Virus record (IMG/VR): IMGVR_UViG_3300024239_000013
Coordinates: 62,001 to 126,000 of that record
Length of the DNA stretch: 64,000 nt
Strand: one strand, 5' to 3'
The position numbers were made by a program, and so were the translations under genes. Below the pieces are notes generated by a model. That model was not told where the DNA came from, did not search any database, and saw only the letters and a program-made list of their open reading frames with translations. Numbering within the stretch: position 1 is the first letter of the stretch; the number at the start of each line of letters is the position of its first letter. Of the stretch, positions 35,716-60,268 are shown one piece after another.

Positions 35716-35796
35716 TTGTATAAAATTTTTGATATTAAATATAGCAGCAAATATAAGAAATAAATATAACTGTTGCTTTCAATCTTATAGTGAATT

Positions 35797-36287: not shown

Positions 36288-36429
36288 TTTTGTTATCTAA
36301 TTTAAGTTATTCATATTTTGATAATTTGTGATTCTGAGCCCGCAAGTAAATATTTTCATCTTTAGACACACTGCATATAAACCCAGGTTCTGTTTCAAAA
36401 AATTCAAAGGCTTATAGTTTTATATCAAG

Positions 36430-37410: not shown

Positions 37411-37441
37411 ATTTTATTTTTTTAATCTATTAATTTCTAGC

Positions 37442-37882: not shown

Positions 37883-38088
37883 AATTATTACCACTTACTA
37901 CAAGTGGGAAGTTTATTTTTTTGTTATATATTTCAACACTTATAATTCTTTCTGAGGTACGATTAATTTTCCAAATCGCTTGTTCTATTGCTCTTTCAAA
38001 TGATAATGCTGAAATATTTATCCTTCGTTTTTTTTTCCAGAAATATCATTTATAATGGTAATTCTATAAGTTTCCATAATTATGATTT

Positions 38089-40139: not shown

Positions 40140-40229
40140 AATTTTATTTCACTTGCTTTATAGCGGGAAGTTTTAAGGTTAAAGGTTTGTATTACTTTTA
40201 TTTCGTCTATATAGATGTTATATGCAAGG

Positions 40230-40521: not shown

Positions 40522-40812
40522 CTATTTAACTTTAAATTTTACTAGTTCTCCAAAATCCATTAATTTACCTCTAAAATCACAAATTTTAGATTTTCCTGAA
40601 ACCTTATAATAAGGGCAATCCTTATTACATTCAGATTTATCACCAACAGTTTCTAATTCTGAACACCATATATAATCTTTTTCTTTTGAAGGAATTGCTT
40701 CAAAAAGTTCTATTTCATTCAATCCTTCTTCTTTTGCTCTTTCTAAATAAGTTTGTAAAGGATAACAAATGTTAGCATCTTCATTTTCAAAATATAATTT
40801 TTCTGTTTTCAT
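40522..40812 (-). CDS. Cys-rich hypothetical protein
   Basis: ORF track. Confidence 0.55.
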   Translation of the reverse strand: MKTEKLYFENEDANICYPLQTYLERAKEEGLNEIELFEAIPSKEKDYIWCSELETVGDKSECNKDCPYYKVSGKSKICDFRGKLMDFGELVKFKVK

Positions 40813-41362
40813 AACTTAATTTTCTTTCAATTTAATCCAACCATATTCAATTAGGTTATCTACAGATAAACCCACGTAAGGTAATGCATAACCTTTAGAA
40901 CGGAGGTAATCAAAAACTTGCATCCAATTTTTAATTCCATTAGTACTAGAAGTAGTTCCGCTGTCATTAATTGAAGTTCTAAAAATTGATAGTATTAATT
41001 CTTTAATTGCACCAGATAAATGACCTAGTCCAAATATTTTAGAAACCTCAATAGCATCTTCATCACTTATCTGTGAAAGTGGGTTTAGTATTAATTGGCA
41101 TTCATTTATATTTGCATTACATGATAATTCATTTTTTTCAAAATTTTCATCTTCTAATGATACTATCCAAACCTGCTTTGTAAAATTTCCACATGATAAA
41201 TAGAATGAAACTATATTTCCTATTCTATCTTGGTAAAATACTTGTTGATTTAAATACTGAGCAAAAAACTTTGCTTTATTTTCTAATGTGTTTTCTGTTT
41301 TCATAACTTAATTTTCTTTCAATTTAATCCAACCATATTCAATTAGGTTATCTACAGATAAA
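40799..41362. repeat. perfect 72-bp direct repeat (40799-40870 and 41291-41362)
   Basis: Covers the 3' end of each family E gene and the next MKTE start. Confidence 0.9.
40816..41304 (-). CDS. family E paralogue 1
   Basis: MKT.NTLENKAKFFAQY...PLSQIS.ED...RSKGYALP...LIEYGWIKLKEN. Confidence 0.75.
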   Translation of the reverse strand: MKTENTLENKAKFFAQYLNQQVFYQDRIGNIVSFYLSCGNFTKQVWIVSLEDENFEKNELSCNANINECQLILNPLSQISDEDAIEVSKIFGLGHLSGAIKELILSIFRTSINDSGTTSSTNGIKNWMQVFDYLRSKGYALPYVGLSVDNLIEYGWIKLKEN

Positions 41363-41769
41363 TCCATCCAAGGTAATGCATAACCTTTGGAACGAAAGTA
41401 ATCACATTCCTTTGACCCAATTTTTCTATCACCATTCCAATGATGGAGACTTCTGAAGGTCTTAAAATTACGACCTAATTCAATCGAGGCAATTTCACTA
41501 AAAGTAAAATAATGATTAACTTCCAATATCTCCCCTAGTTCATCATAAGTTTTATTATATGTAAACATAATGCCCTGGATCGTGTCTTCATTACTAATCT
41601 GTGAAAGTGGTTTTAGCTCTAAGTAACTCCTATCTATACCATACATATTCGATGTATCTACAGGATAAATTTCTTTATTCCCTGAATTTGATATATCCGA
41701 TAAAACTTTTTGTCCCCAATACTGAGCAAAAAACTTTGCTTTATTTTCTAATGTGTTTTGTGTTTTCAT
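41308..41769 (-). CDS. family E paralogue 2
   Basis: Same constant blocks, unrelated interiors. Confidence 0.75.
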   Translation of the reverse strand: MKTQNTLENKAKFFAQYWGQKVLSDISNSGNKEIYPVDTSNMYGIDRSYLELKPLSQISNEDTIQGIMFTYNKTYDELGEILEVNHYFTFSEIASIELGRNFKTFRSLHHWNGDRKIGSKECDYFRSKGYALPWMDLSVDNLIEYGWIKLKEN

Positions 41770-41774
41770 AATTT

Positions 41775-45479: not shown

Positions 45480-45725
45480 TTATTCATAATCTTCCGAATC
45501 CTTATTTATATCAAGACTGTCACAAACAGAAAAGATTCCTTTATACTTTTCGTCGTAATCTTCTTCCCAATTCTTCGATATTTCGTTCCAAATATATCCT
45601 TATGAACCTTTAGAGTTTTCCGAATATCTAAATTCAACAATCTCGTCATCAACATCAACCTTTCACTGGATACTTTCGACTCGCCATACAACTTGAACGT
45701 CCTCAAGTAACTTAATTTTTTCCAT
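45480..45725 (-). pseudogene. acidic 81-codon gene with two premature stops
   Basis: MEKIKLLEDVQVVWRVESIQ*KVDVDD...KGS*GYIWNE...EDYE*. Confidence 0.55.
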
Positions 45726-46572
45726 ATTTTTTATATTGTTCAAAACATTTTTTCATTCCACTATAGATTTTAGAATAGTCCTTATTATCTCTTAATTCTA
45801 CACTATGTAAAGCATTTATAATTTCCTCCTCACTATACATTCTTTCTTGTTGCCATTTAGCAATATGAATAAACATTGATTTTATCCAAGTTTTTTCATG
45901 GGGTTGAATGGTTTTTGCTTCTAATAATTCTAAACTATACTTTTCAGCAGCTTCTTCAAGGGTTTCTTGTTTTTGATTTTCTAAAAACTCTTTAACTCCT
46001 TCCTTATCTAAATGTTGAAATTCATTCCAATCTCCAAGAACTTTTTCTTTCGGGTTATTTTTTAGATATTCTTGTAAATTTTCAACAATTGTTTTAGGTT
46101 TGTGTTTTTCTTTTGAAATGATTATTTTGTAAAAAATTTGTGGGTTACATTTATAAGTATAATCACAAGATGATTTAACAGAACTATCACAAGATGTGCA
46201 TTTACAAATAGAATCAAATTTAACCTCCTCACAATTAGGATTTTTAACAAACCATTCTAAAAACTCATCATCAATAGCTTGTACACCATCTTTGATTAAG
46301 TCTTGGTCTGTTGTCATTATGACTAATTTACATTCGGATAAATCAGTTAGATAATTAGGAAACTTATTTAAAATATTTCCTTTTTCTAAATGCCATTTCC
46401 CTTTATGTAGTCTTACATCTTTAATTTCTTCATCATAAGTGATGTAAATGTGTTGGTTATTCAATCTTCCTCCTCTAATAATACAATTCTTATCAAGTCC
46501 TAAATTATTTGTCAATTCAGATCTAAATAATCTACTTGGTTTATCTGTTGGCACTAAATGTATGTTTTTCAT
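45712..46572 (-). CDS. family B paralogue
   Basis: MKNIH..PTDKPSRL / IYIT..EEIK / TTDQDLIKDGVQ.IDDEFLEWFVKNP.CE / KQETLEEAAE / AKWQQE..YSEEE. Confidence 0.85.
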   Translation of the reverse strand: MKNIHLVPTDKPSRLFRSELTNNLGLDKNCIIRGGRLNNQHIYITYDEEIKDVRLHKGKWHLEKGNILNKFPNYLTDLSECKLVIMTTDQDLIKDGVQAIDDEFLEWFVKNPNCEEVKFDSICKCTSCDSSVKSSCDYTYKCNPQIFYKIIISKEKHKPKTIVENLQEYLKNNPKEKVLGDWNEFQHLDKEGVKEFLENQKQETLEEAAEKYSLELLEAKTIQPHEKTWIKSMFIHIAKWQQERMYSEEEIINALHSVELRDNKDYSKIYSGMKKCFEQYKKYGKN

Positions 46573-46577
46573 GACCT

Positions 46578-46970
46578 TTATTTTTCTTTAACAATTTCAA
46601 TTAATTTCTTTAAACATTCAAGTTCTGCTTCTTCTTGTGTTCTACACAAGTACCATTCTCCTATTCCGATTTCCTTATAATTTCCAAAATGTTCATATTG
46701 GAATATGTCAAAACAGAATTTGGGATCTGTTGTTCTGTCTATTTGAATTTCACAAAATAGGTTATATTTCTCTCTAAACCATCTAAATGCTTGTGAGAAT
46801 GTCGGGGCATATATATTTTGAATTGCTTCTTCTAAATAATTGTAATCATTAGGAGAATCCTGATAGTAGATTAAACTATTATTTTGACTATAAAATCCAA
46901 AACAAGATTCATCAAATCCTAATTCTTTTAAAGCTAATGCAATTTTATAAGGTACGAATTCCCTTTCCAT
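46578..46970 (-). CDS. family A paralogue
   Basis: ME.EF.PY..AL.LKELGFDE.C / APTFSQAFRWFREKY / EEAELECLKKLIEIVK. Confidence 0.85.
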   Translation of the reverse strand: MEREFVPYKIALALKELGFDESCFGFYSQNNSLIYYQDSPNDYNYLEEAIQNIYAPTFSQAFRWFREKYNLFCEIQIDRTTDPKFCFDIFQYEHFGNYKEIGIGEWYLCRTQEEAELECLKKLIEIVKEK

Positions 46971-46971
46971 T

Positions 46972-47382
46972 TTAAATTAATTTTAATGCTTCTTGTAACC
47001 CAACCTCGTAGGCTTCTTCATAAGTATCGTAAGTAATATCACCTCTTTTCCACATTTGGATAATACCAACTGGTAATCTATGTAAATCAAATGACCAATT
47101 TAATAATTTATTGTAATTATTATTACTTATTTCAATATGGATATTATGTTGTTCTCTCAACCATTTAGCAAGTAGTGATTGTGTTGGTGCATAAGCAACT
47201 ATTGTTAATATATTACCAAAACTATCTACACTTCCTACAGAATGACTATGATGTAGCTTTATTTTCTTATACTGCTTATTATCACTATTAGGAGTGTTAG
47301 CAAAACAAACATCTGTAAAAATGTTAAATCCTTTTTCTTTTGCAAGTTTTGCTGTTTTAAATGTTATAAGTGTATCTTCCAT
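46972..47382 (-). CDS. family C paralogue
   Basis: TAKLAKEKGF / APTQSLLAKWLRE / TYEEAYEVGLQEALKLI. Confidence 0.85.
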   Translation of the reverse strand: MEDTLITFKTAKLAKEKGFNIFTDVCFANTPNSDNKQYKKIKLHHSHSVGSVDSFGNILTIVAYAPTQSLLAKWLREQHNIHIEISNNNYNKLLNWSFDLHRLPVGIIQMWKRGDITYDTYEEAYEVGLQEALKLI

Positions 47383-47886: not shown

Positions 47887-47923
47887 TTATTACTTTTTAA
47901 TTATATAAACACCATGAATTTCT

Positions 47924-48145
47924 TCATATTGAGGTAATCCATTTTTTAAGTTCTTTTATTTCCTTTTTGTAATCATCTTGTTGTACTATTAAACTAAAGT
48001 TTAAAGCGATCGAAAATCCAAATAAAACCACCATTAAAAATACATAATATATTCTTGAATATTTTTTATCATCAATGGCATAGCATACTTTAAAATATCC
48101 TATTATAAATAGAATAATCATTATTACAAGCACTGTTTCTCTCAT
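47924..48145 (-). CDS. small two-TM membrane protein
   Basis: Two hydrophobic segments. Confidence 0.55.
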   Translation of the reverse strand: MRETVLVIMIILFIIGYFKVCYAIDDKKYSRIYYVFLMVVLFGFSIALNFSLIVQQDDYKKEIKELKKWITSI

Positions 48146-48495
48146 AATTTATTTCTTTTATATTGTTCAAACCATTTTTTAAAAACATCTTTCTTAGATA
48201 TTTCAATAATTTCCCATTTTTCTAATTTTATTAACTCTTTATATTGATAATAAAAATCAGCAAATTCAATCATATCTTCCTCTGTATACAAGTTTTTATT
48301 TTGTTCTTGTTGCCATTTAGCACCTTCGATCCATTCGTCCCTATATTGTTTATTTTTATCCCATTCATCATCTTCTAAAACAATTGGGTATAACATATAA
48401 GCAATCTCTTCAAGTGTTTCTTGTTTAGGTTCTTCTAATGGAGTACAATCACAATAAATTGTATGACCACAATAACATTTTGTTTTATTTTCCAT
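48142..48495 (-). CDS. family B C-terminal module with short Cys-rich N-terminus
   Basis: CYCGH..CDC then PKQETLEE...GAKWQQEQNKNLY...WFEQYK. Confidence 0.8.
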   Translation of the reverse strand: MENKTKCYCGHTIYCDCTPLEEPKQETLEEIAYMLYPIVLEDDEWDKNKQYRDEWIEGAKWQQEQNKNLYTEEDMIEFADFYYQYKELIKLEKWEIIEISKKDVFKKWFEQYKRNKL

Positions 48496-48499
48496 TATT

Positions 48500-49285
48500 T
48501 TACTTTTTAAATTGTTTTAAAATTAATTTATTAAACCAATCGCCAAACTGTATTTTTGAAAAACCTACAGATGATAATGCTTCATTATAAGAGTGTTTAG
48601 CAATTTTTTCAACCTCTTCCTCATTATACAAGTTTTTGTTTTGCTCTTGTTGCCATTCTGAACCTAGTCTAAAAAATAATATAAGACTATCAATTAGTGT
48701 TTCGTTTGATATTTTTCCACCTTTAGGATAATCTGAAAAAGTCTTATTAAAAGTTTCTAAAGCAATTCTTTTTGCTATTTGTTCAAGTGTTTCTTGTTTA
48801 GGTTCTTTTTTTGGAATGATTATTTTATATAATTGACCACCGTTATTTAACCACTCATCAAATTCCCTGTCAGTTAACCCTATATCATGTCCGTGAATAT
48901 TTAATTCAACTTCTATCTCATCAGGAGTTTTTTCATCAACATTAATAAACTCACAACTAGGATTTTTAACAAACCATTCTAAAAACTCATCATCAATAGC
49001 TTGTACCCCATCATTTATTAAGTCTTGGTCTGTTGTTAAGATGATTTTAGAAGCATTATCTAATTCTTTAGAAAGTAAATATGATACTTGAACCAATCTA
49101 CCATCTTTAGTGATTATCCAATCATTATCTTTAATGTCTTTTTCAGAAGTAATGTAGATATTTTTAGGTTCAACATATTCAACACCTCCTCTAGGAAATT
49201 TATCAAATATCAAATAGTTTTCCTTTCTAGTTGATAACCATAACCTACTTGGTTTATCTGTTGTTAATAAATGTATGTTTTTCAT
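48500..49285 (-). CDS. family B paralogue
   Basis: All constant blocks. Confidence 0.85.
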   Translation of the reverse strand: MKNIHLLTTDKPSRLWLSTRKENYLIFDKFPRGGVEYVEPKNIYITSEKDIKDNDWIITKDGRLVQVSYLLSKELDNASKIILTTDQDLINDGVQAIDDEFLEWFVKNPSCEFINVDEKTPDEIEVELNIHGHDIGLTDREFDEWLNNGGQLYKIIIPKKEPKQETLEQIAKRIALETFNKTFSDYPKGGKISNETLIDSLILFFRLGSEWQQEQNKNLYNEEEVEKIAKHSYNEALSSVGFSKIQFGDWFNKLILKQFKK

Positions 49286-49290
49286 AATAA

Positions 49291-49680
49291 TTAAATTTTA
49301 AAATCAATATTTTCAGGTTTTAGAATATTTTCATATGCTTCTTTATAAGCTTTTTTTATATAATATGACCCAATTCCTGCATAATAAAAAATATCTGCAA
49401 GTGTTTTGTCTTCTGATTTATTAAATTCATTAGTTGCTAATATTTTTATAAGTCTATCTACTTCATTCTTTAAAGAAGTAAAATAATTATATTCTTCACT
49501 ACCAATTTCGAATTTTTTTACTATTCTATCTTTACCATTATTAATCCAAGTGAAATTATATCTATCAGGTTTATAATCAATATGTTCTATTCTTAAATTT
49601 TTTCCTTCTTCTGCCGATACGTAATAGTATTTAATACGACCTCTAAAATTTATAAGAGCGTAATAATCTTTATTTTCCAT
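49291..49680 (-). CDS. hypothetical protein (MENK start)
   Basis: ORF track, start adjusted. Confidence 0.55.
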   Translation of the reverse strand: MENKDYYALINFRGRIKYYYVSAEEGKNLRIEHIDYKPDRYNFTWINNGKDRIVKKFEIGSEEYNYFTSLKNEVDRLIKILATNEFNKSEDKTLADIFYYAGIGSYYIKKAYKEAYENILKPENIDFKI

Positions 49681-50065
49681 AATTTTGTTCTTTAGCAATT
49701 TCAATTAATTTCTTTAAACATTCAAGTTCTGCTTCTTCGTAAGAATTAAATGATATTCCTTCATGTAAAGTCCAATACATTTCAATATCGCAAAAAACAG
49801 CAAATGTATATGAAGGTTTTGTATGATAATGCACAAATTTATGTAAATTGTGGGTTTTTCTAAACCATCTAAATGCTTGTGAAAATGTTGGTGCAGCAAT
49901 CATTAGTTTATCTCTATTTGAATGAAATGAACATATTTCATCTTTCATAGGAATAGGTTTTAATTTGTTATTTTCTTCTATATCAAAATAAAAACTCAAT
50001 GCTTCATCAAATCCTAATTCTTTTAAAATTAATGCTAAATTATAAGGGATAAATTCTTTTTCCAT
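49670..50065 (-). CDS. family A paralogue
   Basis: Constant blocks. Confidence 0.85.
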   Translation of the reverse strand: MEKEFIPYNLALILKELGFDEALSFYFDIEENNKLKPIPMKDEICSFHSNRDKLMIAAPTFSQAFRWFRKTHNLHKFVHYHTKPSYTFAVFCDIEMYWTLHEGISFNSYEEAELECLKKLIEIAKEQNYGK

Positions 50066-50069
50066 TATT

Positions 50070-50984
50070 TTACTTTTTAAATTGTTGAATCAAGTAAGTT
50101 ATAAACCAATTTCTTTTTCTAACCCACTCATCAAAATTTGTGTTGGAGTTATCTTTTAATTCTTTAGTGTTAATATAATTACTTATATTTATAAGCATGT
50201 CTTTAACTTCTTCCTCTGTATACAAATTTTTATTTTGTTCTTGTTGCCATTTAGCACCATTTATGAAGATTAATCTTTCTGTTTCACTCATATCAAAACC
50301 TGAATCAGTAAAACTATTTATTGTTGTAGGATATAATCTTTCGGCAGCTTCTTCAATTGTTTCTTGTTTTATTTCTTCTTTATCTTGCATCATTGGAATA
50401 GCTAATTTGATTGTCTCTTCACCTATACTTACTAATTCAAACTCTTCTTCTTTTGGTGAATATCCACAATAACATTGTGTTTTAGGTGTTAATGTCATTC
50501 CTTTTGAACCACATTCAGGACAAATATCTTCTTCTTTTGTAATAATTAACACATAAGAATGACTACTTTCATCAAAATAAGGAACTTTGAGAGTTCTAAC
50601 AAAATCACAATTAGGATTTTTTACAAACCATTCTAAGAACTCATCATCAATTTCTTGTACACCATCATTAATTAAGTCTTGGTCTGTTGTTAGGATAATT
50701 TTTTTACAATCACAAATTAAAACTTCAATACCATTAATATGATAGTTTTTTTCTCTAAAAGATTTATTACCGTTCGATTCAGTAATTACTCCAACTTCTA
50801 ATATTCGATTTGTATATAAATGTAAAACAAAACCTTCTTTAATTTCTTCATCAGAAGTGATGTAGATATGTTGATTTAATATAGTATCAGTGCCATATTG
50901 AAATCCTTTAGCAAATCCTAACTTTCCATTATAAATATATAATCTACTTCGTTTTTCTGTTGGTAATAAATGTATGTTTTTCAT
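50070..50984 (-). CDS. family B paralogue
   Basis: Constant blocks; CPECG..CYCG insert. Confidence 0.85.
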   Translation of the reverse strand: MKNIHLLPTEKRSRLYIYNGKLGFAKGFQYGTDTILNQHIYITSDEEIKEGFVLHLYTNRILEVGVITESNGNKSFREKNYHINGIEVLICDCKKIILTTDQDLINDGVQEIDDEFLEWFVKNPNCDFVRTLKVPYFDESSHSYVLIITKEEDICPECGSKGMTLTPKTQCYCGYSPKEEEFELVSIGEETIKLAIPMMQDKEEIKQETIEEAAERLYPTTINSFTDSGFDMSETERLIFINGAKWQQEQNKNLYTEEEVKDMLINISNYINTKELKDNSNTNFDEWVRKRNWFITYLIQQFKK

Positions 50985-50986
50985 AA

Positions 50987-51409
50987 TTATTCTTTAATGT
51001 ATGTGTATTTTGTTAGAATCATAGTTTTAAGTCTCCTTACTTCTCCTATTTGAGCACCTCCTTGACATTTATTAACAAGTTCATTATACTCATTGTACCA
51101 GATTTTTTCTAAATCTTCTTTAGTACCTGTTTTATTTACTAATTCTTCAAAATACTCAGCATAATTCCAGAATATAATAGATTTTCTATTTATAGATATC
51201 GCAAGAATAACCAACCAAGAAAATATCATTCCCATTAAAACACCATATTTTAAATAATTAAGATTATCAGTAAATGTTCTTTCTCCAGAAATGTAGTCTA
51301 ATCCATAGAACAAAGTTGATATAAAAAATATTAAAATTGGATATATTACTATCCACACCTTAAATAAATGTGTCTTTTCGAAAAATCTGTTAAATGTTTT
51401 CATAGACAT
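50987..51409 (-). CDS. two-TM membrane protein, paralogue of 13135-13533
   Basis: Sequence comparison. Confidence 0.6.
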   Translation of the reverse strand: MSMKTFNRFFEKTHLFKVWIVIYPILIFFISTLFYGLDYISGERTFTDNLNYLKYGVLMGMIFSWLVILAISINRKSIIFWNYAEYFEELVNKTGTKEDLEKIWYNEYNELVNKCQGGAQIGEVRRLKTMILTKYTYIKE

Positions 51410-51831
51410 TTTTTCTTAAATTGTTCAAACCATTTATCATAAGTAATATGAACAGGATTATTTTCAACATTATTTTGATAAGATTCAATTATATCGTGAA
51501 CTTCTTCCTCACTATACAATTTTTTATTTTGTTCTTGTTGCCATTTAGCACCATTAATAAAATCTAATTTATTTACTTCACTTGGAACAACATTTTCATA
51601 ATCTAAACCTGTTATTTCTTCCCAATTTTCTGAATATTTTTCAGCAGCTTGTTCGAGTGTTTCTTGTTTAGGTTCAATTTTTTTATAATCAATCCATTCA
51701 AACTTACCTTTATTTTCATAAGAAAATTTACTTGACCATACTTTAATACCTTCATCATAATCATAAAAAGGTTCAGTTTTTAAAATAGTACCATCATTCC
51801 ATTTAATAATACCAATCCAATGTTTTCTCAT
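51400..51831 (-). CDS. chimera: unrelated N-terminus plus family B C-terminal module
   Basis: PKQETLEQAAE...FINGAKWQQEQNK.LYSEEE...WFEQFKKK. Confidence 0.8.
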   Translation of the reverse strand: MRKHWIGIIKWNDGTILKTEPFYDYDEGIKVWSSKFSYENKGKFEWIDYKKIEPKQETLEQAAEKYSENWEEITGLDYENVVPSEVNKLDFINGAKWQQEQNKKLYSEEEVHDIIESYQNNVENNPVHITYDKWFEQFKKKCL

Positions 51832-51832
51832 A

Positions 51833-52630
51833 TTATTTCTTTTTGAATTGTTCTAAACTTTCATTTTCTGTAAAATGACCAATACTACCAAAATCATACA
51901 TTTTTCTCATATCTTCCTCTGTATACAAGTTTTTATTTTGTTCTTGTTGCCATTTAGCACCTTCGATCCATTCGTCCCTATATTGTTTATTTTTATCCCA
52001 TTCATCATCTTCTAAAACAATTGGGTATAACATATGAGCAACCTCTTCAAGTGTTTCTTGTTTTGGTTCTTCTGTGTAGTGACCTTCACTTCCGCAAGGA
52101 GCATCACAAGTTACACATCTGTAAAATTTATTAGCTTCTCCACATAGAATGTATTTAGTTTCTTCTTTTGTAATTATTATTTGATACCCTATTTTTTCAT
52201 GGTAAATATATGGTAGTCCATTAAGATGTCTCTCTCTTAATTCATCAATATTAAAATACCTTAATTTATCAATAACTTCAATAAATTCACATTTTGGATT
52301 CTTTACAAACCATTCTAAGAACTCATCATCAACTTCTTGTACACCATCTTTGATTAAATCTTTGTCAGTTGTTAGAATAATTTTACTATAATGTTCAACA
52401 TCATTGTATGCTTTTTCAAGTCCTTTAAAAACCTTTTGAATATCGTAGTCTTGTGAAGTGCTATGAACATAATCTCCTTTTTTAATCTCTTCATCAGAAG
52501 TTATGTAGATATGAACCCCTTTATTAAAAAATGAATTCTTTGAACATAATTCAAATTCAAATTCATTTATACCTTTAAACAATTGTAATCTACTTGGTTT
52601 TTCTGTTGGTAATAAATGTATGTTTTTCAT
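51833..52630 (-). CDS. family B paralogue
   Basis: Constant blocks. Confidence 0.85.
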   Translation of the reverse strand: MKNIHLLPTEKPSRLQLFKGINEFEFELCSKNSFFNKGVHIYITSDEEIKKGDYVHSTSQDYDIQKVFKGLEKAYNDVEHYSKIILTTDKDLIKDGVQEVDDEFLEWFVKNPKCEFIEVIDKLRYFNIDELRERHLNGLPYIYHEKIGYQIIITKEETKYILCGEANKFYRCVTCDAPCGSEGHYTEEPKQETLEEVAHMLYPIVLEDDEWDKNKQYRDEWIEGAKWQQEQNKNLYTEEDMRKMYDFGSIGHFTENESLEQFKKK

Positions 52631-52652
52631 GCCCTTATTTTTTTAGTGATTA

Positions 52653-53126
52653 TTACATAATATCAGTAGAATGATCAATAAGTTTAAGAGATTCATACAA
52701 ACCCTCCTCTAGTGCATTCTCGTAGGTTTTATGGTGAATAGTAAAGAAAGATAATCTTTTCCAAGGTTTACCCGACGGATTTTCCTTATTTGGAACATAG
52801 ATTTCGAATCCAAAATCTCCAGCGATTTTTTGGACTATTAGGACCCTTATTTTATGGGTCTCTCTTAACCAGCATTGAAGATGTGATTGAGTAGGAGCAG
52901 AATATACCTCATAAGAATTATTCGACATATCAAAACCATCGACACCATTCTTATGATAAAAATTTGACATTTCGACCTGATCTTTTTTATAAGATTCTGG
53001 GTGATCTGGATCATCGTCATAAACGTAATCTTTCTTATAAATCACATATGAATTATAAACTCCTAAATCAAAATTCTTATTCTTAGCTAATTTTGCGGTC
53101 TTCTTTGATATCAATCTATCTACCAT
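52653..53126 (-). CDS. family C paralogue
   Basis: TAKLAK.K.F / APTQS.LQ.WLRE / TYENALEEGL.ESLKLI. Confidence 0.8.
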   Translation of the reverse strand: MVDRLISKKTAKLAKNKNFDLGVYNSYVIYKKDYVYDDDPDHPESYKKDQVEMSNFYHKNGVDGFDMSNNSYEVYSAPTQSHLQCWLRETHKIRVLIVQKIAGDFGFEIYVPNKENPSGKPWKRLSFFTIHHKTYENALEEGLYESLKLIDHSTDIM

Positions 53127-53229
53127 ATCGTTTTATATTATGAAGCAAATCTATAAAATTATTACGGAGATAAAAAATAACAACAAAAAATGCACGCTCT
53201 TTATGTGTGATAATTTTTTGGATTCATAT

Positions 53230-53601
53230 TTAGTCACATTGATCCTTGCATAATCTAATTAATGTGTTAAGGCACTCTAGTCTGGCTTCATCGTAGATAC
53301 TAAATTCTTTAGATTTAATAAAAGTAAAACCGGGTTTCGTTACTACAGAGTAGTATAGTGGTAATTTAGGATTTTCGAAAGCATAGGAAACACTACTCTC
53401 CATTTTATAGTTATATCTAAAAAAATCAAAAGCTTGCTGCCAAAGGGGAGCTGATGCAACTTGACCATGGAAACTGAATTGTTTTTTACAATACTCCATA
53501 TTAAGGTACTTATCATCAAGATAACAAGCATAGCATGGTTCATCAAATCCAAGTTTTTCAAGTTCTAATGCTTGTTCATACGGGATAAATTGTTCTTCCA
53601 T
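53230..53601 (-). CDS. family A paralogue (divergent)
   Basis: FIPYEQALELEKLGFDEPC / APLWQQAFDFFR / YDEARLECL. Confidence 0.8.
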   Translation of the reverse strand: MEEQFIPYEQALELEKLGFDEPCYACYLDDKYLNMEYCKKQFSFHGQVASAPLWQQAFDFFRYNYKMESSVSYAFENPKLPLYYSVVTKPGFTFIKSKEFSIYDEARLECLNTLIRLCKDQCD

Positions 53602-53607
53602 AATCTT

Positions 53608-53922
53608 CTATTTTCGTTTGACAATTTCAATTAATTTCTTTAAACATTCAAGTTCTGCTTCTTCGTATGTTTTAAAAACGCTCAGGTTCCACTTTTCAAA
53701 AAACCACATTCCGTATTTTATTTGTATTGAGTAGTACAGTCCATACTTTTCCCTAAACCATCTAAATGTTTGTGAAAATGTTGGTGCTTTATTGATACCA
53801 TCGGAATATCCATAACAAACTTTATTGTTACTAAACTCGTCATAAAATCCCAAACAAGATTCATTAAAACCTAATTCTTTTAAAGATAATGCAACTTCAT
53901 AAGGTAAAAACTCTTTTTCCAT
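53608..53922 (-). CDS. family A paralogue (shortest)
   Basis: Constant blocks. Confidence 0.85.
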   Translation of the reverse strand: MEKEFLPYEVALSLKELGFNESCLGFYDEFSNNKVCYGYSDGINKAPTFSQTFRWFREKYGLYYSIQIKYGMWFFEKWNLSVFKTYEEAELECLKKLIEIVKRK

Positions 53923-53923
53923 T

Positions 53924-54291
53924 TTAAATTAATTTTAATGCTTCTTGTAAACCAATCTCGTAGGATTCTTCATAATTATTTTTTTCTACACTTTGATACC
54001 CTTTTACAATTGGTTTGTCAAAACAAGGTGTTAATATATATTTTTTAATTCCATTGGAAAAAGCTCTCTGAACTAAATATCAATTTCATGTTCTTCTCTC
54101 AGCCATTTAGCAAGTAGTGATTGAGTTGCCCTTTCGTACCATTCTTTACAAGTATCAACCATAGCACCACCTATCCCTAAATTTTCTATACTACCATCAT
54201 CTCTAAACTTTCCTTTTGTTTTTCTTGATTGTGGAAATCCTTTTTCTTTAGCAAGTTTTGCTGTTTCAGATGTTATTCTTGTATCTACCAT
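53924..54291 (-). pseudogene. family C paralogue with 1-nt frameshift near 54075
   Basis: After EEHEIDI the alternative frame reads LVQRAF...YEESYEIGLQEALKLI*. Confidence 0.8.
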
Positions 54292-54423
54292 ATCGTTTTT
54301 ATTATGAAGCAAATCTATAAAATTATTACGAGGATAAAAAATAACAATAAAAAAAATAGATGTTCTTTATGTGTGATAATTTTTTGGATTCATATTTAGT
54401 CACATTGATCCTTGCATAACCTT

Positions 54424-54792
54424 CTATTTTCGTTTGACAATTTCAATTAATTTCTTTAAACATTCAAGTTCTGCTTCTTCGTATGTACCATTATAGTTCA
54501 TAGGTTCAGTTCCAAGTTGTCTATTTCCTTTATTATCAAAAACTTGATAAGAAAACTCTTGTGTTCCAATCTCAATTAAACCACATAATTTATACTTTTC
54601 TCTAAAGAATCTAAATGCTTGTGAGAATGTTGGGCAGTTAATTGTATTATACAACATTGAACCTCTTGGTGAAGATTTACTTCCTTTAACGTGAATGTAA
54701 CCTATTTGGTCTATACTACCAAAACAAGTCTCATCAAATCCTAATTCTTTAAGTTCTAATGCCAAATTATAAGGTACAAATTCTTTTTCCAT
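54424..54792 (-). CDS. family A paralogue
   Basis: Constant blocks; last about 60 nt identical to 53608-53922. Confidence 0.85.
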   Translation of the reverse strand: MEKEFVPYNLALELKELGFDETCFGSIDQIGYIHVKGSKSSPRGSMLYNTINCPTFSQAFRFFREKYKLCGLIEIGTQEFSYQVFDNKGNRQLGTEPMNYNGTYEEAELECLKKLIEIVKRK

Positions 54793-54993: not shown

Positions 54994-55857
54994 TCATTTA
55001 TTTTTAAATTGTTCAAACCATTGTTGTTCTGTTAAATTAGAGTCTAATCCATATGTTTCAGAATAACTAATATTTTGTTCTCCTTGTCTAAATGCTTCCC
55101 TTAAATCTTCCTCACTATATAAGTTTTCATCTTGTTTTTGTTGCCATTTAGCACCAGTTATAAATGAACCGTAGTTGTCTCCTGCGGTATTATCGTTATT
55201 TGACCACTTATTACCATTGATTTCAAATACCCATTTTTTAGCAGCTTCTTCTAGTGCTTCTTGTTTAGACTCTAACTCATGAGAATATTTTTCTAAACCT
55301 TGTTGCTCGTATTCTTGAACTGTTTGTTTAGGCTCTTTTTTTCTCATAGGACAATGTATTGAATGACAATTTTTAAAATTAGAGGTTCTACATTTTGGAC
55401 AATTGATAGGTTCTTCTTTTGATATTTCGGTATCTTCTTTTGGAATGATTATTTCATAGTCGTAAGTATCCCCAACTTCATGAAAATATTTTTCAACTTC
55501 AACCTCCTCACAATTTGGATTCTCAACAAACCACTCTAAAAACTCATCATCAATTTCTTGAACACCATCTTTGATTAAGTCTTGGTCTGTTGTTAAAATG
55601 ATTTTTTTAGGTTTATTATTACTTCTTAAAGCCATTGTGTTTTGCCAAAACCAAACTCTACCGTTATTATAAACCCAAACATCATTTTCAAAACCTGTTA
55701 TTTCTTCATCAGAAGTGATATAAATATTAACATATTCTTTAAATGAGTCATTTACTTCAACATCTAATTTTAATGTGAAAGTTTCTCTATTAACATCATT
55801 GTAAATTTTAACTAATCTACTCGGTTTATTTGTTGGTAAGATGTATAAGTTTTTCAT
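54994..55857 (-). CDS. family B paralogue
   Basis: Constant blocks; CPKC..CHSIHC insert. Confidence 0.85.
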   Translation of the reverse strand: MKNLYILPTNKPSRLVKIYNDVNRETFTLKLDVEVNDSFKEYVNIYITSDEEITGFENDVWVYNNGRVWFWQNTMALRSNNKPKKIILTTDQDLIKDGVQEIDDEFLEWFVENPNCEEVEVEKYFHEVGDTYDYEIIIPKEDTEISKEEPINCPKCRTSNFKNCHSIHCPMRKKEPKQTVQEYEQQGLEKYSHELESKQEALEEAAKKWVFEINGNKWSNNDNTAGDNYGSFITGAKWQQKQDENLYSEEDLREAFRQGEQNISYSETYGLDSNLTEQQWFEQFKNK

Positions 55858-55994: not shown

Positions 55995-56654
55995 TTATAG
56001 GTTTTTTTCAACCCATTTATCCCATTCAAAAAAGACACTATGCAAAGAATCCGATTTCCAGCCATTTTCACAATATTCCTTTACTTTATTAGCAAATTCA
56101 ATAACCTCTTCCCTACTCCAGCTATCTTTTGCTATCTTAATTGTAATAGTATTGTCTTGTGGATTTATTTTTAATATAGATTTAACCTTATCATAACCAT
56201 ATGCATCTAGTTCATCCACATATTCTTTACCCTCAAATTTATTTTCACATTCAACTAATACATCGGTAATAATGTTCCCACGATTATATTCTTCAATATA
56301 TTTTTGAATAAATTGTTGTGATGGTTGAGGTAATTCTAAAGAAGAGTCAGTCGAAGCAATTACTTTTTTAGCTACATTTTTAAATTCCTTAGTAATAGCC
56401 TCTAATCTTTTTGAATCACATTTATGTAATCCATAATAAGAAGATTTCATAGATGTACCTAAATACCAGTCATTTTCTTTAATTTCATCATCTGAAATAA
56501 TATAAAGATGATGCCCAATATAATCTTCATGTTCCATTAAATATTTAGTTTTAATAGCAATTATTTTATCTTGTCCTGTTATATCTTTACAAATCATTCC
56601 ATCTGTTTTTTGATTAGTTGGTAGCATTACCACATTCGCATTAATAAAGCTCAT
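55995..56654 (-). CDS. distant family B relative
   Basis: MLPT / HLYIISDDEIKENDW / KVIASTD / WSREEV. Confidence 0.65.
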   Translation of the reverse strand: MSFINANVVMLPTNQKTDGMICKDITGQDKIIAIKTKYLMEHEDYIGHHLYIISDDEIKENDWYLGTSMKSSYYGLHKCDSKRLEAITKEFKNVAKKVIASTDSSLELPQPSQQFIQKYIEEYNRGNIITDVLVECENKFEGKEYVDELDAYGYDKVKSILKINPQDNTITIKIAKDSWSREEVIEFANKVKEYCENGWKSDSLHSVFFEWDKWVEKNL

Positions 56655-56693: not shown

Positions 56694-57104
56694 TTAAATT
56701 AATTTTAATGCTTCTTGTAATCCAATCTCATAGGCTTCTTCATAAGTTTTAAAATGCAGTGTGAAGTATGCTAATCTTTCAAAAGGTTTTCCGACAGGAT
56801 TGTCTTTATTTGGAATATAAATTTCGAATCCAAAATCTCCTGCAATTTTTTGTATTGGGTATACTCTTATACTATATTCTTCTCTCAACCATTTAGCAAG
56901 TAGTGATTGTGTTGGGGCAGAAACAAATTCTATATCAGATGTATTTTCTCCTCTTATATACTTTCTTATCCTCCAATCTGATACATCTCCTTTAAATTCT
57001 CCCTTGTAATTATAATAAGGAATTTCAAGTCTGTTAGTTTCTTGGAAAAATCCTTTTTCTTTAGCAAGTTTTGCGGTTTCAAATGTTACTCTTGTATCTT
57101 CCAT
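56694..57104 (-). CDS. family C paralogue
   Basis: MEDTRVTFETAKLAKEKGF / APTQSLLAKWLRE / TYEEAYEIGLQEALKLI. Confidence 0.85.
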   Translation of the reverse strand: MEDTRVTFETAKLAKEKGFFQETNRLEIPYYNYKGEFKGDVSDWRIRKYIRGENTSDIEFVSAPTQSLLAKWLREEYSIRVYPIQKIAGDFGFEIYIPNKDNPVGKPFERLAYFTLHFKTYEEAYEIGLQEALKLI

Positions 57105-57563: not shown

Positions 57564-58424
57564 TTATTTCTTTTTAGATAATAAAAAATCTTCTTTTGCA
57601 TCTACTCTAAATGAACTAGCATATTTATGAAATAATAAATCAATAATTTTTAAAACCTCTTCTTCACTATACATTCTTTCTTGTTGACATTTGACTAATT
57701 CTATTGCTCGTTTGATGACTATAGGTTTTGTTATATCTCCAAAACCGTCAAATATTCTTTCAGCAGCTTCTTCAAGTGTTTCTTGTTTGGGTTTTAAATT
57801 TTGTAACTCAATAATACTTCTAGTACCAAAGCCTATTTGTTTTAGTTTACTTTGTTCTATATTAAGTGCTTCTTCTAAAGTTAGATTAAATTGTTTTAAA
57901 GAGTTCTCTAATCTTACTGATATTACTTGTTTCTTTTCTTCTTTTGGAATGATTATTTTAAATAGTATGTGAGTTCTATAATTACCATGACAGGTTTTAT
58001 ATTTAGGATTGTTTTTGTCTTCATTACAATTACTACATACGTAATTATATTTAACATCAACCTTTTCACAACTTGGATTCTTAACAAACCATTCTAAGAA
58101 CTCATCATCAATTTCTTGAACACCATCTTTGATTAAGTCTGGGTGTGTTGTTAGGATTACTTTTTTATACTTATAATCAGTACCTGTTGATATATTCAAG
58201 ACTTGTTCCTCATTACATTTAAATAATTCAGTAATTTTTTCATTATTAGGTGTAAATTCGATACACCAATCTCCCTTTTTAATTATTTCATCAGAAGTAA
58301 TGTAGATGTGTTGAGATGTATTGAATGGTAATACATTTTTTGATAATTCTAACTTACCTTGAAGTAAATTATTTTTCCATAATCTACTTGGTTTATCTGT
58401 TGGTAATATATGTATATTTTTCAT
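57564..58424 (-). CDS. family B paralogue
   Basis: Constant blocks. Confidence 0.85.
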   Translation of the reverse strand: MKNIHILPTDKPSRLWKNNLLQGKLELSKNVLPFNTSQHIYITSDEIIKKGDWCIEFTPNNEKITELFKCNEEQVLNISTGTDYKYKKVILTTHPDLIKDGVQEIDDEFLEWFVKNPSCEKVDVKYNYVCSNCNEDKNNPKYKTCHGNYRTHILFKIIIPKEEKKQVISVRLENSLKQFNLTLEEALNIEQSKLKQIGFGTRSIIELQNLKPKQETLEEAAERIFDGFGDITKPIVIKRAIELVKCQQERMYSEEEVLKIIDLLFHKYASSFRVDAKEDFLLSKKK

Positions 58425-58816: not shown

Positions 58817-58879
58817 AATGTCCATCTTATTAAAGGACAAATTTATAAAAATGTTACGAATAAAAAAAATATCAGAAAT

Positions 58880-59447
58880 CTATAAGTTTCCTGATATTAA
58901 TCTTTTAGCATTAGAAATAATTTCTTCTATTTCATAAGCCCCTTCAAAGGTTCCTGTGCTAAGTACACATACACATTTTCCATTTTTATCTAATATTCTA
59001 GGAGGTGATTTACCATCCCATTCAAATGTCCATGGGGTTTCTAGTGAATCTTTAATATTAGCAATAGAAATTCTTCTTTGAGCTTCAGCATTATGCTCTT
59101 CTGGAGTCATTTGTTTCTTTTTAGCCATTCCTTTATTATTTGAATGCAAAAATAATAAAAGATAACGAGATAAAAAAAATAATCTATAATAATATGTTTT
59201 TAATACACATGACCAAGCAATCCTCAATTGTTTTTATATTTTCTGTGCAGTAATCGCCACCAAATCCCCCATGAACAGCATGCATTCCTCTTTCATCTGT
59301 TACAGAAACATAAAAATCGTCTATTCTTTGTTTCTCTATAATTATTTGATGGTTTTTGTAGTAGCATTCAAGAGAATTTTCACTTTGATGTGTTATCATT
59401 TTATCTCTTATTATTCTGGTCTTACCTTCAACTAAAACTTTTATCAT
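58880..59447 (-). other. two small hypothetical CDS (58880-about 59128, 59184-59447)
   Basis: ORF track. Confidence 0.5.
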
Positions 59448-59473: not shown

Positions 59474-60268
59474 CTATCCCGTTACTGATTTATTACTTAT
59501 TAGAGAATTGTAACCATTTTTAATGGAGTCATATTTTAGAATATATTCTGATTCTATTCTAAAAACTTCTTTATCTGGAGTATCTGGTGGTAATTCATCC
59601 AGAACTTCGAATGTCCATTCGCTTAATTTCGTTTCCCTTAGATATAAACCAAATGGGCTTGACGAGTGTGTTAAATGGTTCCACCATCTAAAAAATGGAG
59701 CATTTCTTGTTTTCCCTATGTAGCTTTTACCTGTTGATTTTTCTGTACATTTATAGATGTAATTAGGAGATCCTTCATTTATATAATTGATATCATCCTC
59801 TAGTTCTGCATTTTTATAATACTCAATTTTCCAATTTTCGTAGCAATCCGGGGTCTCTATAATATCGTTACCAGTTCTATAGTCGCTTCCACAAAAAACC
59901 TTTCCGGGAAAAATTCTACTCACTAGAGGTCTGCTTTCATATCTATTCTTATGAACATTTCCGCAATAATCACATTTCCATTCTCCTTTTTTTATATCAT
60001 TTATTTCATATTGATATAATGGAAATATAACAACATAAAAAAATTGTGCTTGATCCTTGGTCTCTCTTTCATAGACCTTGTTATTAGGAAAGAATTGTGG
60101 ATATTTTTCTAATAATATCGATTTTACTTCAGTTTTATCCTTGGCCTCTATAAGAGGCTCTCTTAGAACCTCGACTGTGTCAAATCCACTATAAGAATCA
60201 GTAGCTATAGATTTAACGACCCTTATAATTGCTTTATAGTAATTAGTTTCATTTTCTATCATATTCAA
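59474..60268 (-). CDS. GIY-YIG nuclease domain protein
   Basis: YIYKCT...SYIGKT..RWWNH...ESEYI...GYN. Confidence 0.75.
   Translation of the reverse strand: MNMIENETNYYKAIIRVVKSIATDSYSGFDTVEVLREPLIEAKDKTEVKSILLEKYPQFFPNNKVYERETKDQAQFFYVVIFPLYQYEINDIKKGEWKCDYCGNVHKNRYESRPLVSRIFPGKVFCGSDYRTGNDIIETPDCYENWKIEYYKNAELEDDINYINEGSPNYIYKCTEKSTGKSYIGKTRNAPFFRWWNHLTHSSSPFGLYLRETKLSEWTFEVLDELPPDTPDKEVFRIESEYILKYDSIKNGYNSLISNKSVTG

What the first reader, a model, noticed from the sequence alone, without database searches (positions are those of the whole stretch)
48271..52073. A variable segment copied between two otherwise different family B genes
48271-48436 and 51908-52073 are about 166 bp with 3 mismatches by my count. 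They include the normally variable MLYPIVLEDDEWDKNKQYRDEWIE segment and are bounded by constant blocks; flanks are unrelated. This is direct evidence of recent exchange or conversion. The segment QKIAGDFGFEIY.PNK.NP.GKP is similarly shared only by 52653-53126 and 56694-57104.
Basis: seen in the sequence. Interest (0 to 1): 0.68.

Follow-up and report, generated by a model that had tools for sequence, protein, structure and literature searches.

The report
Copied cassette between two phage paralogs
Two otherwise different genes of one repeated family in a 319-kb phage genome share a 166-base stretch that was copied between them recently, and the family as a whole appears to reshuffle such cassettes at short blocks kept nearly constant at the DNA level.

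Summary
Window 48271-48436 and 51908-52073 are 166 nt with 3 mismatches, including a 128-nt perfect run, in frame in two minus-strand genes (117 aa and 265 aa). The flanks fall at once to 30-40% identity.

The tract is constant block 1 (EEPKQETLEE), a 24-codon core, and constant block 2 (GAKWQQEQNKNLYTEEDM).
- Core identity is 99% for this pair and 45-60% for the other 27 paralog pairs.
- dS is about 0.04, against 0.25-1.5 in the best-conserved block of the family.
- Among the seven copies of this core with DNA in hand, the two window copies are each other's nearest relatives (2 differences; 6-7 and 17-19 to the others).
- Independent Logan contigs support all four flank/repeat junctions.
- No reverse transcriptase is encoded, and no RNA signal was found.

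The best reading is recent recombination or gene conversion between paralogs through the constant blocks. It is not a one-off:
- Two other phage contigs show the same kind of copied module.
- A related strain carries hybrid genes joined inside constant blocks.
- Metagenomic proteins combine cores and tails freely.
- The constant blocks keep rare codons across distant phages (P same codon about 0.8; controls about 0.55).

Protein function and the direction of transfer remain unknown.

The parts
48271..48436 (-). Copy A of the shared 166-nt tract (const1 48397-48435, core K1 48325-48396, const2 48271-48324)
   Evidence: 163/166 identical to copy B, with a 128-nt perfect run; core identity 99% for this pair, against 45-60% for the other pairs.
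51908..52073 (-). Copy B of the shared tract (const1 52034-52072, core 51962-52033, const2 51908-51961)
48142..48495 (-). Gene B48s, 117 aa. A short stand-alone C-module gene: Cys-rich start MENKTKCYCGHTIYCDC, then const1-K1-const2, then tail DMIEFADFYYQYKELIKL...
   Evidence: The N-terminus and tail recur with other cores in metagenomic proteins. It lies 4 nt downstream of the full-length gene 48500-49285.
51833..52630 (-). Gene B52, 265 aa. A full-length family-B gene: N-module, Cys-rich linker, const1-K1-const2, own tail ending EQFKKK
   Evidence: AF2 model: N-module pLDDT about 89; C-module helices 194-201 and 215-233.
45712..46572 (-). Family-B paralog (286 aa)
48500..49285 (-). Family-B paralog (261 aa), immediately upstream of B48s
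50070..50984 (-). Family-B paralog (304 aa). Its const2 is 96% identical to both copies. In run X16 its body is joined directly to the B48s tail.
51400..51831 (-). Short family-B gene (143 aa, C-module only), immediately downstream of B52
   Evidence: Its core recurs joined to the B48s-type tail in P0005 and P0011.
54994..55857 (-). Family-B paralog (287 aa)
57564..58424 (-). Family-B paralog (286 aa)
55995..56654 (-). Divergent family-B relative (219 aa); best match to phrog_15656
   Evidence: E 2.1e-13; distant relatives in Cellulophaga, Bacteroides and Leptolyngbya phages.
52764..52832 (-). Second pair, copy 1: QKIAGDFGFEIYVPNKENPSGKP in family-C gene 52653-53126
   Evidence: 58/69 nt identical to the other copy.
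56784..56852 (-). Second pair, copy 2: QKIAGDFGFEIYIPNKDNPVGKP in family-C gene 56694-57104. That gene's termini are 90-100% like 46972-47382.

Best explanation
The 166-nt tract was copied recently from one family-B paralog to the other, within this phage lineage, by homologous recombination. This could be ectopic gene conversion or a double crossover during replication or co-infection. The recombination was primed by the two short constant blocks that every family member carries: const1 (KQETLEE) and const2 (GAKWQQEQNKNLY).

The unit moved is const1-core-const2. In the AF2 model it forms a helix, a loop and the first part of a long helix.

Shown:
- the near-identity, synonymous sites included;
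- its restriction to this one pair;
- that the two copies are each other's nearest relatives;
- that both copies exist in independent contigs;
- that the same kind of copying, and hybrid genes joined inside constant blocks, occur in other phages and in a related strain.

Inferred:
- that the constant blocks are the crossover sites;
- that the exchange was non-reciprocal;
- that the arrangement serves to reshuffle a binding or specificity determinant of an early, accessory phage protein of unknown function.

The direction of transfer is unresolved.
For: Tract and its age:
- 163/166 identity, a 128-nt perfect run, flanks at 30-40%.
- dS 0.04 in the tract (1 synonymous difference over about 25 sites), against 0.25-1.5 between paralogs in the best-conserved 33-codon N-module block.
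- core 99% against 45-60% in the other 27 pairs; const1 94% against 69-86%; const2 100% against 78-96%.
- over 117 nt of the cassette the two window copies differ at 2 sites. They differ at 6-7 sites from the L089/L210/L211 lineage and at 17-19 from L213 and L009, and they share derived letters.

Physical reality:
- in run X1, contigs 47900-48299, 48369-48838, 51526-51936 and 52006-52331 match with no differences at about 42-51x. They break about 30 nt inside the perfect repeat, as expected of a true two-copy repeat in a k=31 graph.
- run X5 (another study) has copy A with both of its junctions.
- run X16 has one 2,019-nt contig that joins 52700-52639, 50984-50227 and 48292-47942. These are hybrids joined at the start block and inside const2.

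Recurrence:
- L075 has 134 nt at 98.5% between a short C-module gene and a full-length gene, again spanning const1 to const2 but with a different core. L009 has 122 nt at 97.5% covering const2, tail and end.
- cores and tails combine freely in metagenomic proteins.

DNA-level conservation of the constant blocks:
- CTT is used for Leu in 87 of 105 instances, against a background of 0.19. P(same codon) is 0.77-0.81 against 0.49 expected, while control families from the same loci give 0.53-0.62.
Against: - No raw reads or long reads were available. The Logan contigs do not span the 128-nt perfect repeat, so linkage of each flank pair rests on graph logic and on the original assembly.
- No close relative with both loci assembled was found, so polarity and non-reciprocity are untested.
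- The tract ends where homology between the two genes ends, so the crossover points cannot be placed more precisely than 'within or at the edge of the constant blocks'.
- No recombinase was identified with confidence. RecT and ERF are absent. The only RecA-like hit is a sub-threshold match in a KaiC/AAA_24-like ATPase.
- The same core is 95% identical in an otherwise unrelated phage, so an external donor for one of the two copies is not strictly excluded.
Confidence: 0.85

Rival explanations
1. Each gene acquired the K1 cassette separately from co-infecting phages of the wider gene pool. On this reading the transfer was horizontal, not intragenomic.
For: The cassette circulates. At least 22 other metagenomic proteins carry it in other contexts. 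The L089 lineage has it at 95% nt identity while sharing no other nucleotide similarity over 15 kb.
Against: The two window copies differ at 2 of 117 sites, but at 6-7 sites from the closest external lineage. They also share derived letters (GAG, ATG for Met, GAC) absent from all the others. Two separate imports would need the same unsampled donor.
Confidence: 0.07
2. The segment is an old duplicated domain kept identical by selection on the protein or on the DNA, with no recent exchange.
For: The family's constant blocks are unusually conserved at synonymous sites across phages, so some DNA-level constraint or homogenisation does exist.
Against: The core differs at synonymous sites between phages that keep almost the same peptide: L213 and L009 differ at 17-19 of 117 nt. 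Selection therefore does not freeze its codons. The flanks of the two genes are unalignable, which a plain old duplication does not explain.
Confidence: 0.04
3. It is an assembly artefact: a chimera of strains or a duplicated segment created by the assembler.
For: The record is a metagenome-assembled contig. The 128-nt perfect repeat exceeds common k-mer sizes. Only contigs, not reads, could be laid.
Against: - An independent assembly (Logan) of run X1 contains all four junctions with zero differences at equal depth.
- A two-copy direct repeat has only one linear path through the graph.
- The three mismatches sit within 38 nt of a unique flank.
- Both reading frames stay open.
- A different study's run holds copy A in context.
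- The same architecture occurs in L075.
Confidence: 0.03
4. It is a diversity-generating retroelement (template repeat and variable repeat), or an embedded structured RNA or mobile element.
For: Two near-identical repeats of about 130-170 nt with a few mismatches, in a phage.
Against: - No reverse transcriptase (PF00078) anywhere in the 319-kb genome.
- The mismatches are T/A, A/G and T/C, not confined to adenines of one copy.
- No Rfam match.
- The folding energy is not unusual (z -1.2).
Confidence: 0.01

Closest known systems
gp38 adhesins of T2/T6-type phages: hypervariable segments separated by conserved glycine-rich motifs (PMC3157838, citing Tetart et al. 1996, 1998)
   Same: Short, strictly conserved in-frame motifs separate variable segments that come in a restricted palette. 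Genetic exchanges that create chimeras occur within or near the conserved motifs.
   Different: - No sequence or fold relation was found: no Pfam match, and fold-search Z of 3.5 or less.
- Here the genes are small non-structural proteins in a multi-copy array next to replication genes.
- The exchange is between paralogs of one genome, and stand-alone short module genes take part.
- gp38 exchanges were shown by crosses; here they are inferred from sequence.
PeSL-mediated modular shuffling in T4-type hyperplastic regions (PMC2839356, PMC4122927)
   Same: Repeated short conserved sequences scattered through a region of small accessory genes act as recombination sites. This produces insertions, deletions and replacements between close relatives. 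The X16 hybrid contig shows comparable deletions or replacements.
   Different: PeSLs are intergenic promoter plus stem-loop cassettes. The blocks here are coding, in frame and without unusual folding, so they swap parts of proteins rather than whole ORFs. A hairpin cassette reminiscent of PeSLs does occur elsewhere in the window (29.6-40.2 kb) but is not part of this finding.
Ectopic (interlocus) gene conversion and concerted evolution in multigene families (reviewed in PMC3924818, PMC3966223)
   Same: A short tract of near identity is embedded in diverged paralogs. Conserved blocks are homogenised while combinations within the genes increase.
   Different: Those cases are cellular genomes. 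Non-reciprocity is not shown here. In a phage the partner may also be a co-infecting genome or a replication intermediate.
Relaxed homologous recombination by phage recombinases as a source of mosaicism (PMC3945230)
   Same: Short, imperfect homologies suffice for exchange between phage sequences, which gives mosaics.
   Different: No Rad52-like, RecT or ERF recombinase was found in this genome. There is only a sub-threshold RecA/KaiC/AAA_24-like ATPase.
Cassette-based variation systems (pilE/pilS, vlsE; from general knowledge, not tested here)
   Same: Partial copies holding variable segments between conserved flanks lie near full-length genes and share tracts with them.
   Different: The short genes here are intact ORFs with their own start codons. 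No silent/expressed distinction, no directionality and no dedicated machinery is shown.
Lineage-specific expansions of small proteins in jumbo phages, such as about 35 Zn-ribbon copies in Bacillus phage G (PMC7824862)
   Same: A jumbo phage carries a locally expanded family of small proteins of unknown role.
   Different: That survey does not report cassette exchange between the copies.

Membership tests
Ectopic gene conversion / homologous exchange between paralogs | A tract of near identity embedded in otherwise diverged paralogs | tested here: met
   163/166 nt identical, with flanks at 30-40%. Core 99% against 45-60% in the other 27 pairs.
Ectopic gene conversion / homologous exchange between paralogs | Synonymous sites as alike as the others, meaning recent common ancestry rather than protein-level selection | tested here: met
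   dS 0.04 against 0.25-1.5. The same peptide in other phages differs at 6-19 of 117 nt.
Ectopic gene conversion / homologous exchange between paralogs | Homology available at the tract borders to prime the exchange | tested here: met
   const1 and const2 are 69-100% identical among all paralogs and form the two ends of the tract.
Ectopic gene conversion / homologous exchange between paralogs | Non-reciprocal transfer with an identifiable donor | not testable with these tools
   No close relative with both loci assembled was found. Runs X5 and X16 give partial contigs only.
Ectopic gene conversion / homologous exchange between paralogs | Both copies physically present in one genome | tested here: inconclusive
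   All four junctions are present at equal depth in the X1 contigs. No read or contig spans the 128-nt repeat, and there were no long reads.
Diversity-generating retroelement | Reverse transcriptase encoded nearby | tested here: not met
   PF00078 gives no match in the 319-kb genome, and the control genomes did ring.
Diversity-generating retroelement | Differences confined to template adenines | tested here: not met
   The mismatches are T/A, A/G and T/C on the coding strand.
PeSL-type regulatory cassettes | Promoter plus terminator stem-loop, intergenic | tested here: not met
   The blocks are in-frame coding sequence. Fold z -1.2; no Rfam hit.
gp38-type conserved-motif / hypervariable-segment design | Conserved in-frame motifs alternating with variable segments drawn from a limited palette | tested here: met
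   Alignment A2. The K1 core recurs in at least 22 proteins, and the T1 tail occurs with at least 8 different cores.
gp38-type conserved-motif / hypervariable-segment design | Homology to gp38 or an adhesin function | tested here: not met
   No Pfam family; fold-search Z of 3.5 or less. The genomic context is replication/early genes.
PHROG phrog_15656 (unknown function) | Profile match of the N-module | tested here: met
   E 2.1e-13 (55995-56654), 2.1e-9 (50070-50984) and 3.9e-4 (B52).
PHROG phrog_12005 (unknown function; family C) | Profile match over the full length | tested here: met
   E 1.5e-21 and 4.1e-24 for 52653-53126 and 56694-57104.
Silent-cassette antigenic-variation systems | Donor copies are promoterless or truncated and not expressed | tested here: not met
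   The short genes are intact ORFs with ATG starts. Expression could not be tested, because no RNA runs were found.

The most novel reading that the evidence does not exclude
Family B may be a built-in cassette-diversification system of phages that probably infect Bacteroidota. On this reading the stand-alone short C-module genes next to full-length genes serve as a reservoir of alternative cores and tails. The constant blocks would be maintained at the nucleotide level, rare codons included, because they act as recombination junctions. This would let a phage, and the wider phage gene pool, re-assort the specificity determinant of an early host-directed or defence-directed protein. In all three intragenomic copies seen here (G000, L075, L009), one partner is a short stand-alone gene.
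Probability: 0.2. Interest if true: 0.8.

Novelty: new variant of a known kind. Interest (0 to 1): 0.58.

Why it matters
Exchange at conserved motifs is known for tail-fibre adhesins and for regulatory cassettes. Here it is caught almost fresh, inside one genome, in a very large phage protein family with no assigned function: at least 7,996 database hits, no Pfam domain and no solved fold.

The family offers a natural test of whether short coding linkers are kept at the DNA level because they recombine. It also flags the core and tail as the likely specificity determinants, to be probed once a function is found.

Practically, the finding warns that trees, orthology calls and assemblies of such arrays will be misled by mosaicism.

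Tried and rejected
- DGR: rejected. There is no reverse transcriptase and the mismatches are not adenine-specific.
- Structured RNA or known RNA family: nothing beyond a chance tmRNA row at E 0.55; fold z -1.2.
- Cultured-phage relatives of the region: none by megablast, and none by tblastn with B52. Only distant family-C and divergent-B relatives turned up, in Flavobacterium, Cellulophaga, Bacteroides and crAss-like phages, all annotated as hypothetical.
- Function from domains: no Pfam family and only unknown-function PHROGs.
- Function from fold:
  - The full-length model and the N-module model (pLDDT 74 and 89) gave no PDB match: Foldseek E above 0.5, VIA Z of 3.5 or less.
  - BFVD and the Atlas returned only uncharacterised phage proteins, with weak LexA/S24-like rows at TM 0.35-0.45 that I do not accept.
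- Recombinase: RecT and ERF are absent. The RecA profile gave a 14.7-bit hit in a 334-aa KaiC/AAA_24-like ATPase, below all cut-offs, so it is not claimed.
- Polarity:
  - The start of the tail (EEDM) occurs with several tail types, so it is uninformative.
  - P0012 shares the B48s Cys-rich start together with K1, and P0002 shares the start and tail with another core. This is suggestive but not decisive.
- Exact or degenerate scans for the K1 core in IMG/VR found only the L009 contig.
- P0015's DNA could not be fetched.
- The many 'joints' in run X1 with sides of 20-39 letters were not used. They probably come from other paralogs or other phages.
- The large HMM search and the complex prediction were not needed.
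Full report
**1. The observation**

Window 48271-48436 and 51908-52073 align without gaps over 166 nt with three mismatches. blastn extends the match by one base, to 167 nt at 98.2%. This is the second-best self-match of the whole 319,334-nt record, an IMG/VR virus contig in which the window occupies 62001-126000.

On the coding (minus) strand the mismatches are a synonymous CCT/CCA, an Ile/Val and a Tyr/His. All three lie in the first 38 nt, which leaves a 128-nt perfect run. Identity falls to 30-40% immediately outside both ends.

Both copies are in the same frame within intact ORFs:
- 48142-48495, 117 aa, here called B48s;
- 51833-52630, 265 aa, here called B52.

**2. Anatomy of the region**

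Between about 45 and 59 kb the minus strand carries an array of three paralogous families.

Family B begins MKNIHLLPTxKPSRL and typically ends WFEQFKKK. It is modular:
- a beta-rich N-module (AF2 pLDDT 89) that ends in DGVQxIDDEFLEWFVKNPxCE;
- a variable, often Cys-rich, linker;
- a helical C-module made of const1 (EPKQETLEEAA), a 20-36-residue variable core, const2 (GAKWQQEQNKNLYxEE), a variable tail and the end block.

Six full-length copies, one divergent copy and two short copies with the C-module only lie in the window. Two more copies lie at genome 29.0-30.4 kb. Each short copy sits directly downstream of a full-length copy: 48500-49285 then B48s, and B52 then 51400-51831.

The shared tract is exactly const1 + core + const2. 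In the model it corresponds to helix 194-201, a loop, and the first part of helix 215-233.

**3. Why the copy is recent**

- The core is 99% identical in this pair and 45-60% (chance level for a global alignment) in the other 27 pairs. const1 is 94% against 69-86%, and const2 is 100% against 78-96%.
- dS in the tract is 0.04 (one synonymous change over about 25 sites). Between paralogs it is 0.25-1.5 even in the family's best-conserved 33-codon block.
- The same core peptide exists in other phages. Over 117 nt, the two window copies differ at 2 sites, from the L089/L210/L211 lineage at 6-7 sites, and from L213 and L009 at 17-19 sites.
- The window copies also share derived letters that none of the others has.

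So the codons of this cassette are free to drift, and the two copies are each other's closest relatives. That favours copying within this lineage over two separate imports.

**4. Whether the sequence is real**

Only Logan contigs were available, not reads.

- In X1, the probable source sample, contigs 47900-48299, 48369-48838, 51526-51936 and 52006-52331 match with no differences at 42-51x.
- These contigs stop about 30 nt inside the 128-nt perfect repeat. That is the behaviour of a true two-copy repeat in a k=31 graph.
- A two-copy direct repeat allows only one linear path, and the three distinguishing letters lie within 38 nt of a unique flank.
- X5, from another study, holds copy A with both of its junctions (47942-48304 at 95% and 48290-48489 at 99%). 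At 48405 it has the letter of copy B. At least one of the three mismatches is therefore polymorphic, and is most simply a later change.

A misassembly is unlikely, but molecules that span the repeat were not seen.

**5. The event is one instance of a general process**

- *Related strain.* In X16, from a further study, one 2,019-nt contig joins three window pieces: 52700-52639, then 50984-50227 (2 differences), then 48292-47942. This places B52's upstream region on the body of B50, and then the tail of B48s. The joints lie at the start-codon block and inside const2.
- *L075.* On this unrelated 160-kb IMG/VR contig, a 65-aa stand-alone C-module gene and a full-length B gene 1.6 kb away share 134 nt at 98.5%. 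The shared stretch again spans const1 to const2, but with a different core (RLTEGHDDLDSKYSWIEGFEK).
- *L009.* A full-length gene and a short ORF share 122 nt at 97.5%, covering const2, tail and end block.
- *Metagenomic proteins.* The B48s tail is joined to at least eight different cores, including those of window genes 51400-51831 and 48500-49285. The K1 core occurs in at least 22 other proteins with varied N-contexts and tails.
- *L089 lineage.* It shares K1 at 95% nt identity and no other nucleotide similarity over 15 kb.

**6. The constant blocks are conserved as DNA**

In 49-72 distinct contexts per block, drawn from IMG/VR loci whose B proteins are about 35-50% identical, the blocks keep rare codons:
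- CTT for Leu in KQETLEE: 44/47, background 0.19;
- GAG in DDEFLEWF: 59/65, background 0.24;
- ATC-CTA-ACA-ACA-GAC in ILTTD;
- AGT-AGG in KPSRL.

A codon-degenerate scan of IMG/VR for KQET[L/F]EEAA, which is unbiased with respect to codon choice, gave 106 distinct instances. CTT was used 87 times and TTA 15 times. The exact 21-mer AAACAAGAAACACTTGAAGAA accounted for 73.

At conserved amino-acid columns the probability that two genes use the same codon was as follows:

| Family | Observed | Expected |
|---|---|---|
| Family B | 0.77-0.81 | 0.48-0.50 |
| Helicase-like family, same loci | 0.53 | 0.47 |
| ThyA-like family, same loci | 0.56 | 0.46 |
| Four further families | 0.53-0.62 | 0.45-0.50 |
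| Family A | 0.71 | 0.52 |
| Family C | 0.50 | 0.45 |

Either the blocks are continually homogenised by exchange, or they are selected as DNA. The data do not separate these two, and they are not exclusive.

**7. Mechanism and alternatives**

The best reading is homologous recombination, either ectopic gene conversion or a double crossover, primed by const1 and const2.

Excluded alternatives:
- *DGR.* No reverse transcriptase in the genome, and the mismatches are not adenine-specific.
- *Embedded RNA element.* No Rfam family and no unusual folding (z -1.2).

What remains open is the enzyme responsible. RecT and ERF are absent. The only RecA-like signal is a sub-threshold hit in a KaiC/AAA_24-like ATPase. 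Host enzymes or replication-coupled exchange remain possible.

Direction is also unresolved. P0012 carries the B48s-type Cys-rich start with K1, and P0002 carries the B48s start and tail with another core. This hints that cores have been replaced in that lineage, but does not say when.

**8. Function**

Function is unknown.
- No Pfam domain and only unknown-function PHROGs.
- At least 7,996 database relatives at the search's candidate cap, all hypothetical where sensibly named.
- No solved fold: Z of 3.5 or less. Only uncharacterised phage proteins appear in BFVD and the Atlas.
- Distant relatives occur in phages of Flavobacterium, Cellulophaga and Bacteroides and in crAss-like phages. TAnnTTTG boxes precede some of the genes. 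The host is therefore probably a member of the Bacteroidota.
- The array lies next to a GIY-YIG-like gene and a Dda-like helicase, which suggests an early or accessory region.

My inference, at low confidence, is that these are early host-directed or defence-directed proteins whose core and tail set the target specificity.

**9. The second pair**

The peptide QKIAGDFGFEIY.PNK.NP.GKP is shared only by 52653-53126 and 56694-57104. The DNA is 58/69 identical with a longest exact run of 20 nt.

The gene 56694-57104 is itself a mosaic: its termini are 90-100% like 46972-47382, and its middle is like 52653-53126. This is an older sharing within the same mosaic regime, not a fresh conversion.

**10. 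Comparison with what is known**

The design works like the gp38 adhesins of T-even phages. There, conserved glycine-rich motifs separate hypervariable segments, and exchanges fall in or near the motifs (PMC3157838). It also resembles PeSL-mediated shuffling in T4-type hyperplastic regions (PMC2839356, PMC4122927).

It is not a member of either. There is no homology to gp38, and the blocks are coding rather than promoter/stem-loop cassettes.

It fits ectopic gene conversion as known from cellular multigene families (PMC3924818, PMC3966223). I found no description of this family or of its DNA-level junction conservation in the held literature. A limited literature search does not establish that none exists.

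**11. Verdict**

I rate it a new variant of a known kind, of moderate to good interest. The interest comes mainly from the family-wide pattern rather than from the single tract.

Noticed in passing
window 29649-40182 (e.g. 29674-29717, 30516-30559, 37880-37923, 38517-38560): Eight copies of a 44-60-nt cassette with the hairpin CCACTTACTACAAGTGG followed by GAAGTTT. It lies directly 5' of the ATG of minus-strand genes (families D10 and D16). It looks like a repeated regulatory or leader stem-loop, reminiscent of PeSL cassettes.
   Followed up: no
run X16 laid on window 47942-52700 (record 9): A related strain (95-99.7% identity) has one contig that joins the upstream region of 51833-52630, the body of 50070-50984 up to const2, and the tail of 48142-48495. 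It thus lacks about 1.6 kb and about 1.9 kb that are present in the window.
   Followed up: partly
window 53923-54312: A broken family-C gene. There is a 79-aa N-terminal ORF (54073-54312; real start probably the internal ATG of MVDTRITSE) and a detached C-terminal remnant encoding ...NNYEESYEIGLQEALKLI at 53923-53980.
   Followed up: partly
window 53132-53190 and 54296-54354 (also 58824-58882 and 28636-28694): A 59-nt intergenic cassette, 93% identical between the first two copies. It holds a TAnnTTTG box about 27 nt upstream of the ATG, like the -7 element of Bacteroidota promoters.
   Followed up: partly
window 46890-47027 vs 53842-53979; 53595-53670 vs 54411-54486: Further high-identity patches (138 nt at 89%, and 76 nt at 97%). 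They cross gene boundaries between family-A starts or ends and neighbouring genes, so families A and C are mosaic too.
   Followed up: no
window 59474-60268 (-): A 264-aa protein whose C-terminal 90 residues match GIY-YIG homing-endonuclease profiles (phrog_314 E 2.3e-11; Pfam GIY-YIG 17.5 bits, below cut-off). It sits at the upstream edge of the array.
   Followed up: partly
window 61769-63217 (-): A Dda-like / PIF1-RecD-type SF1 helicase (phrog_325 E 1.9e-85; AAA_30, PIF1, UvrD_C_2).
   Followed up: yes
genome 318845-319070 vs 319109-319334 (outside the window): A 226-nt direct repeat at 96% identity at the very end of the contig. It is the best self-match in the genome and may be a terminal or tandem repeat, or an assembly end effect.
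   Followed up: no
genome 29007-30416 (outside the window): Two more family-B copies far from the main array, with an 86-nt 93% patch between them.
   Followed up: no
window 40799-40932 vs 41291-41425, and 41253-41309 vs 41718-41774: Another set of local repeats (135 nt at 89.6%, and 57 nt at 96.5%), which suggests a further tandem paralog family upstream of the array.
   Followed up: no
window 47924-48145 (-) and 50987-51409 (-): Small hydrophobic, probably membrane, proteins interspersed in the array. Neither has a family match apart from a sub-threshold tetraspanin row.
   Followed up: no
L075 7957-10654: The same gene order as in the window: a full-length B gene followed by two stand-alone short C-module genes, then another full-length B gene that shares a cassette with one of the short genes.
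   Followed up: yes
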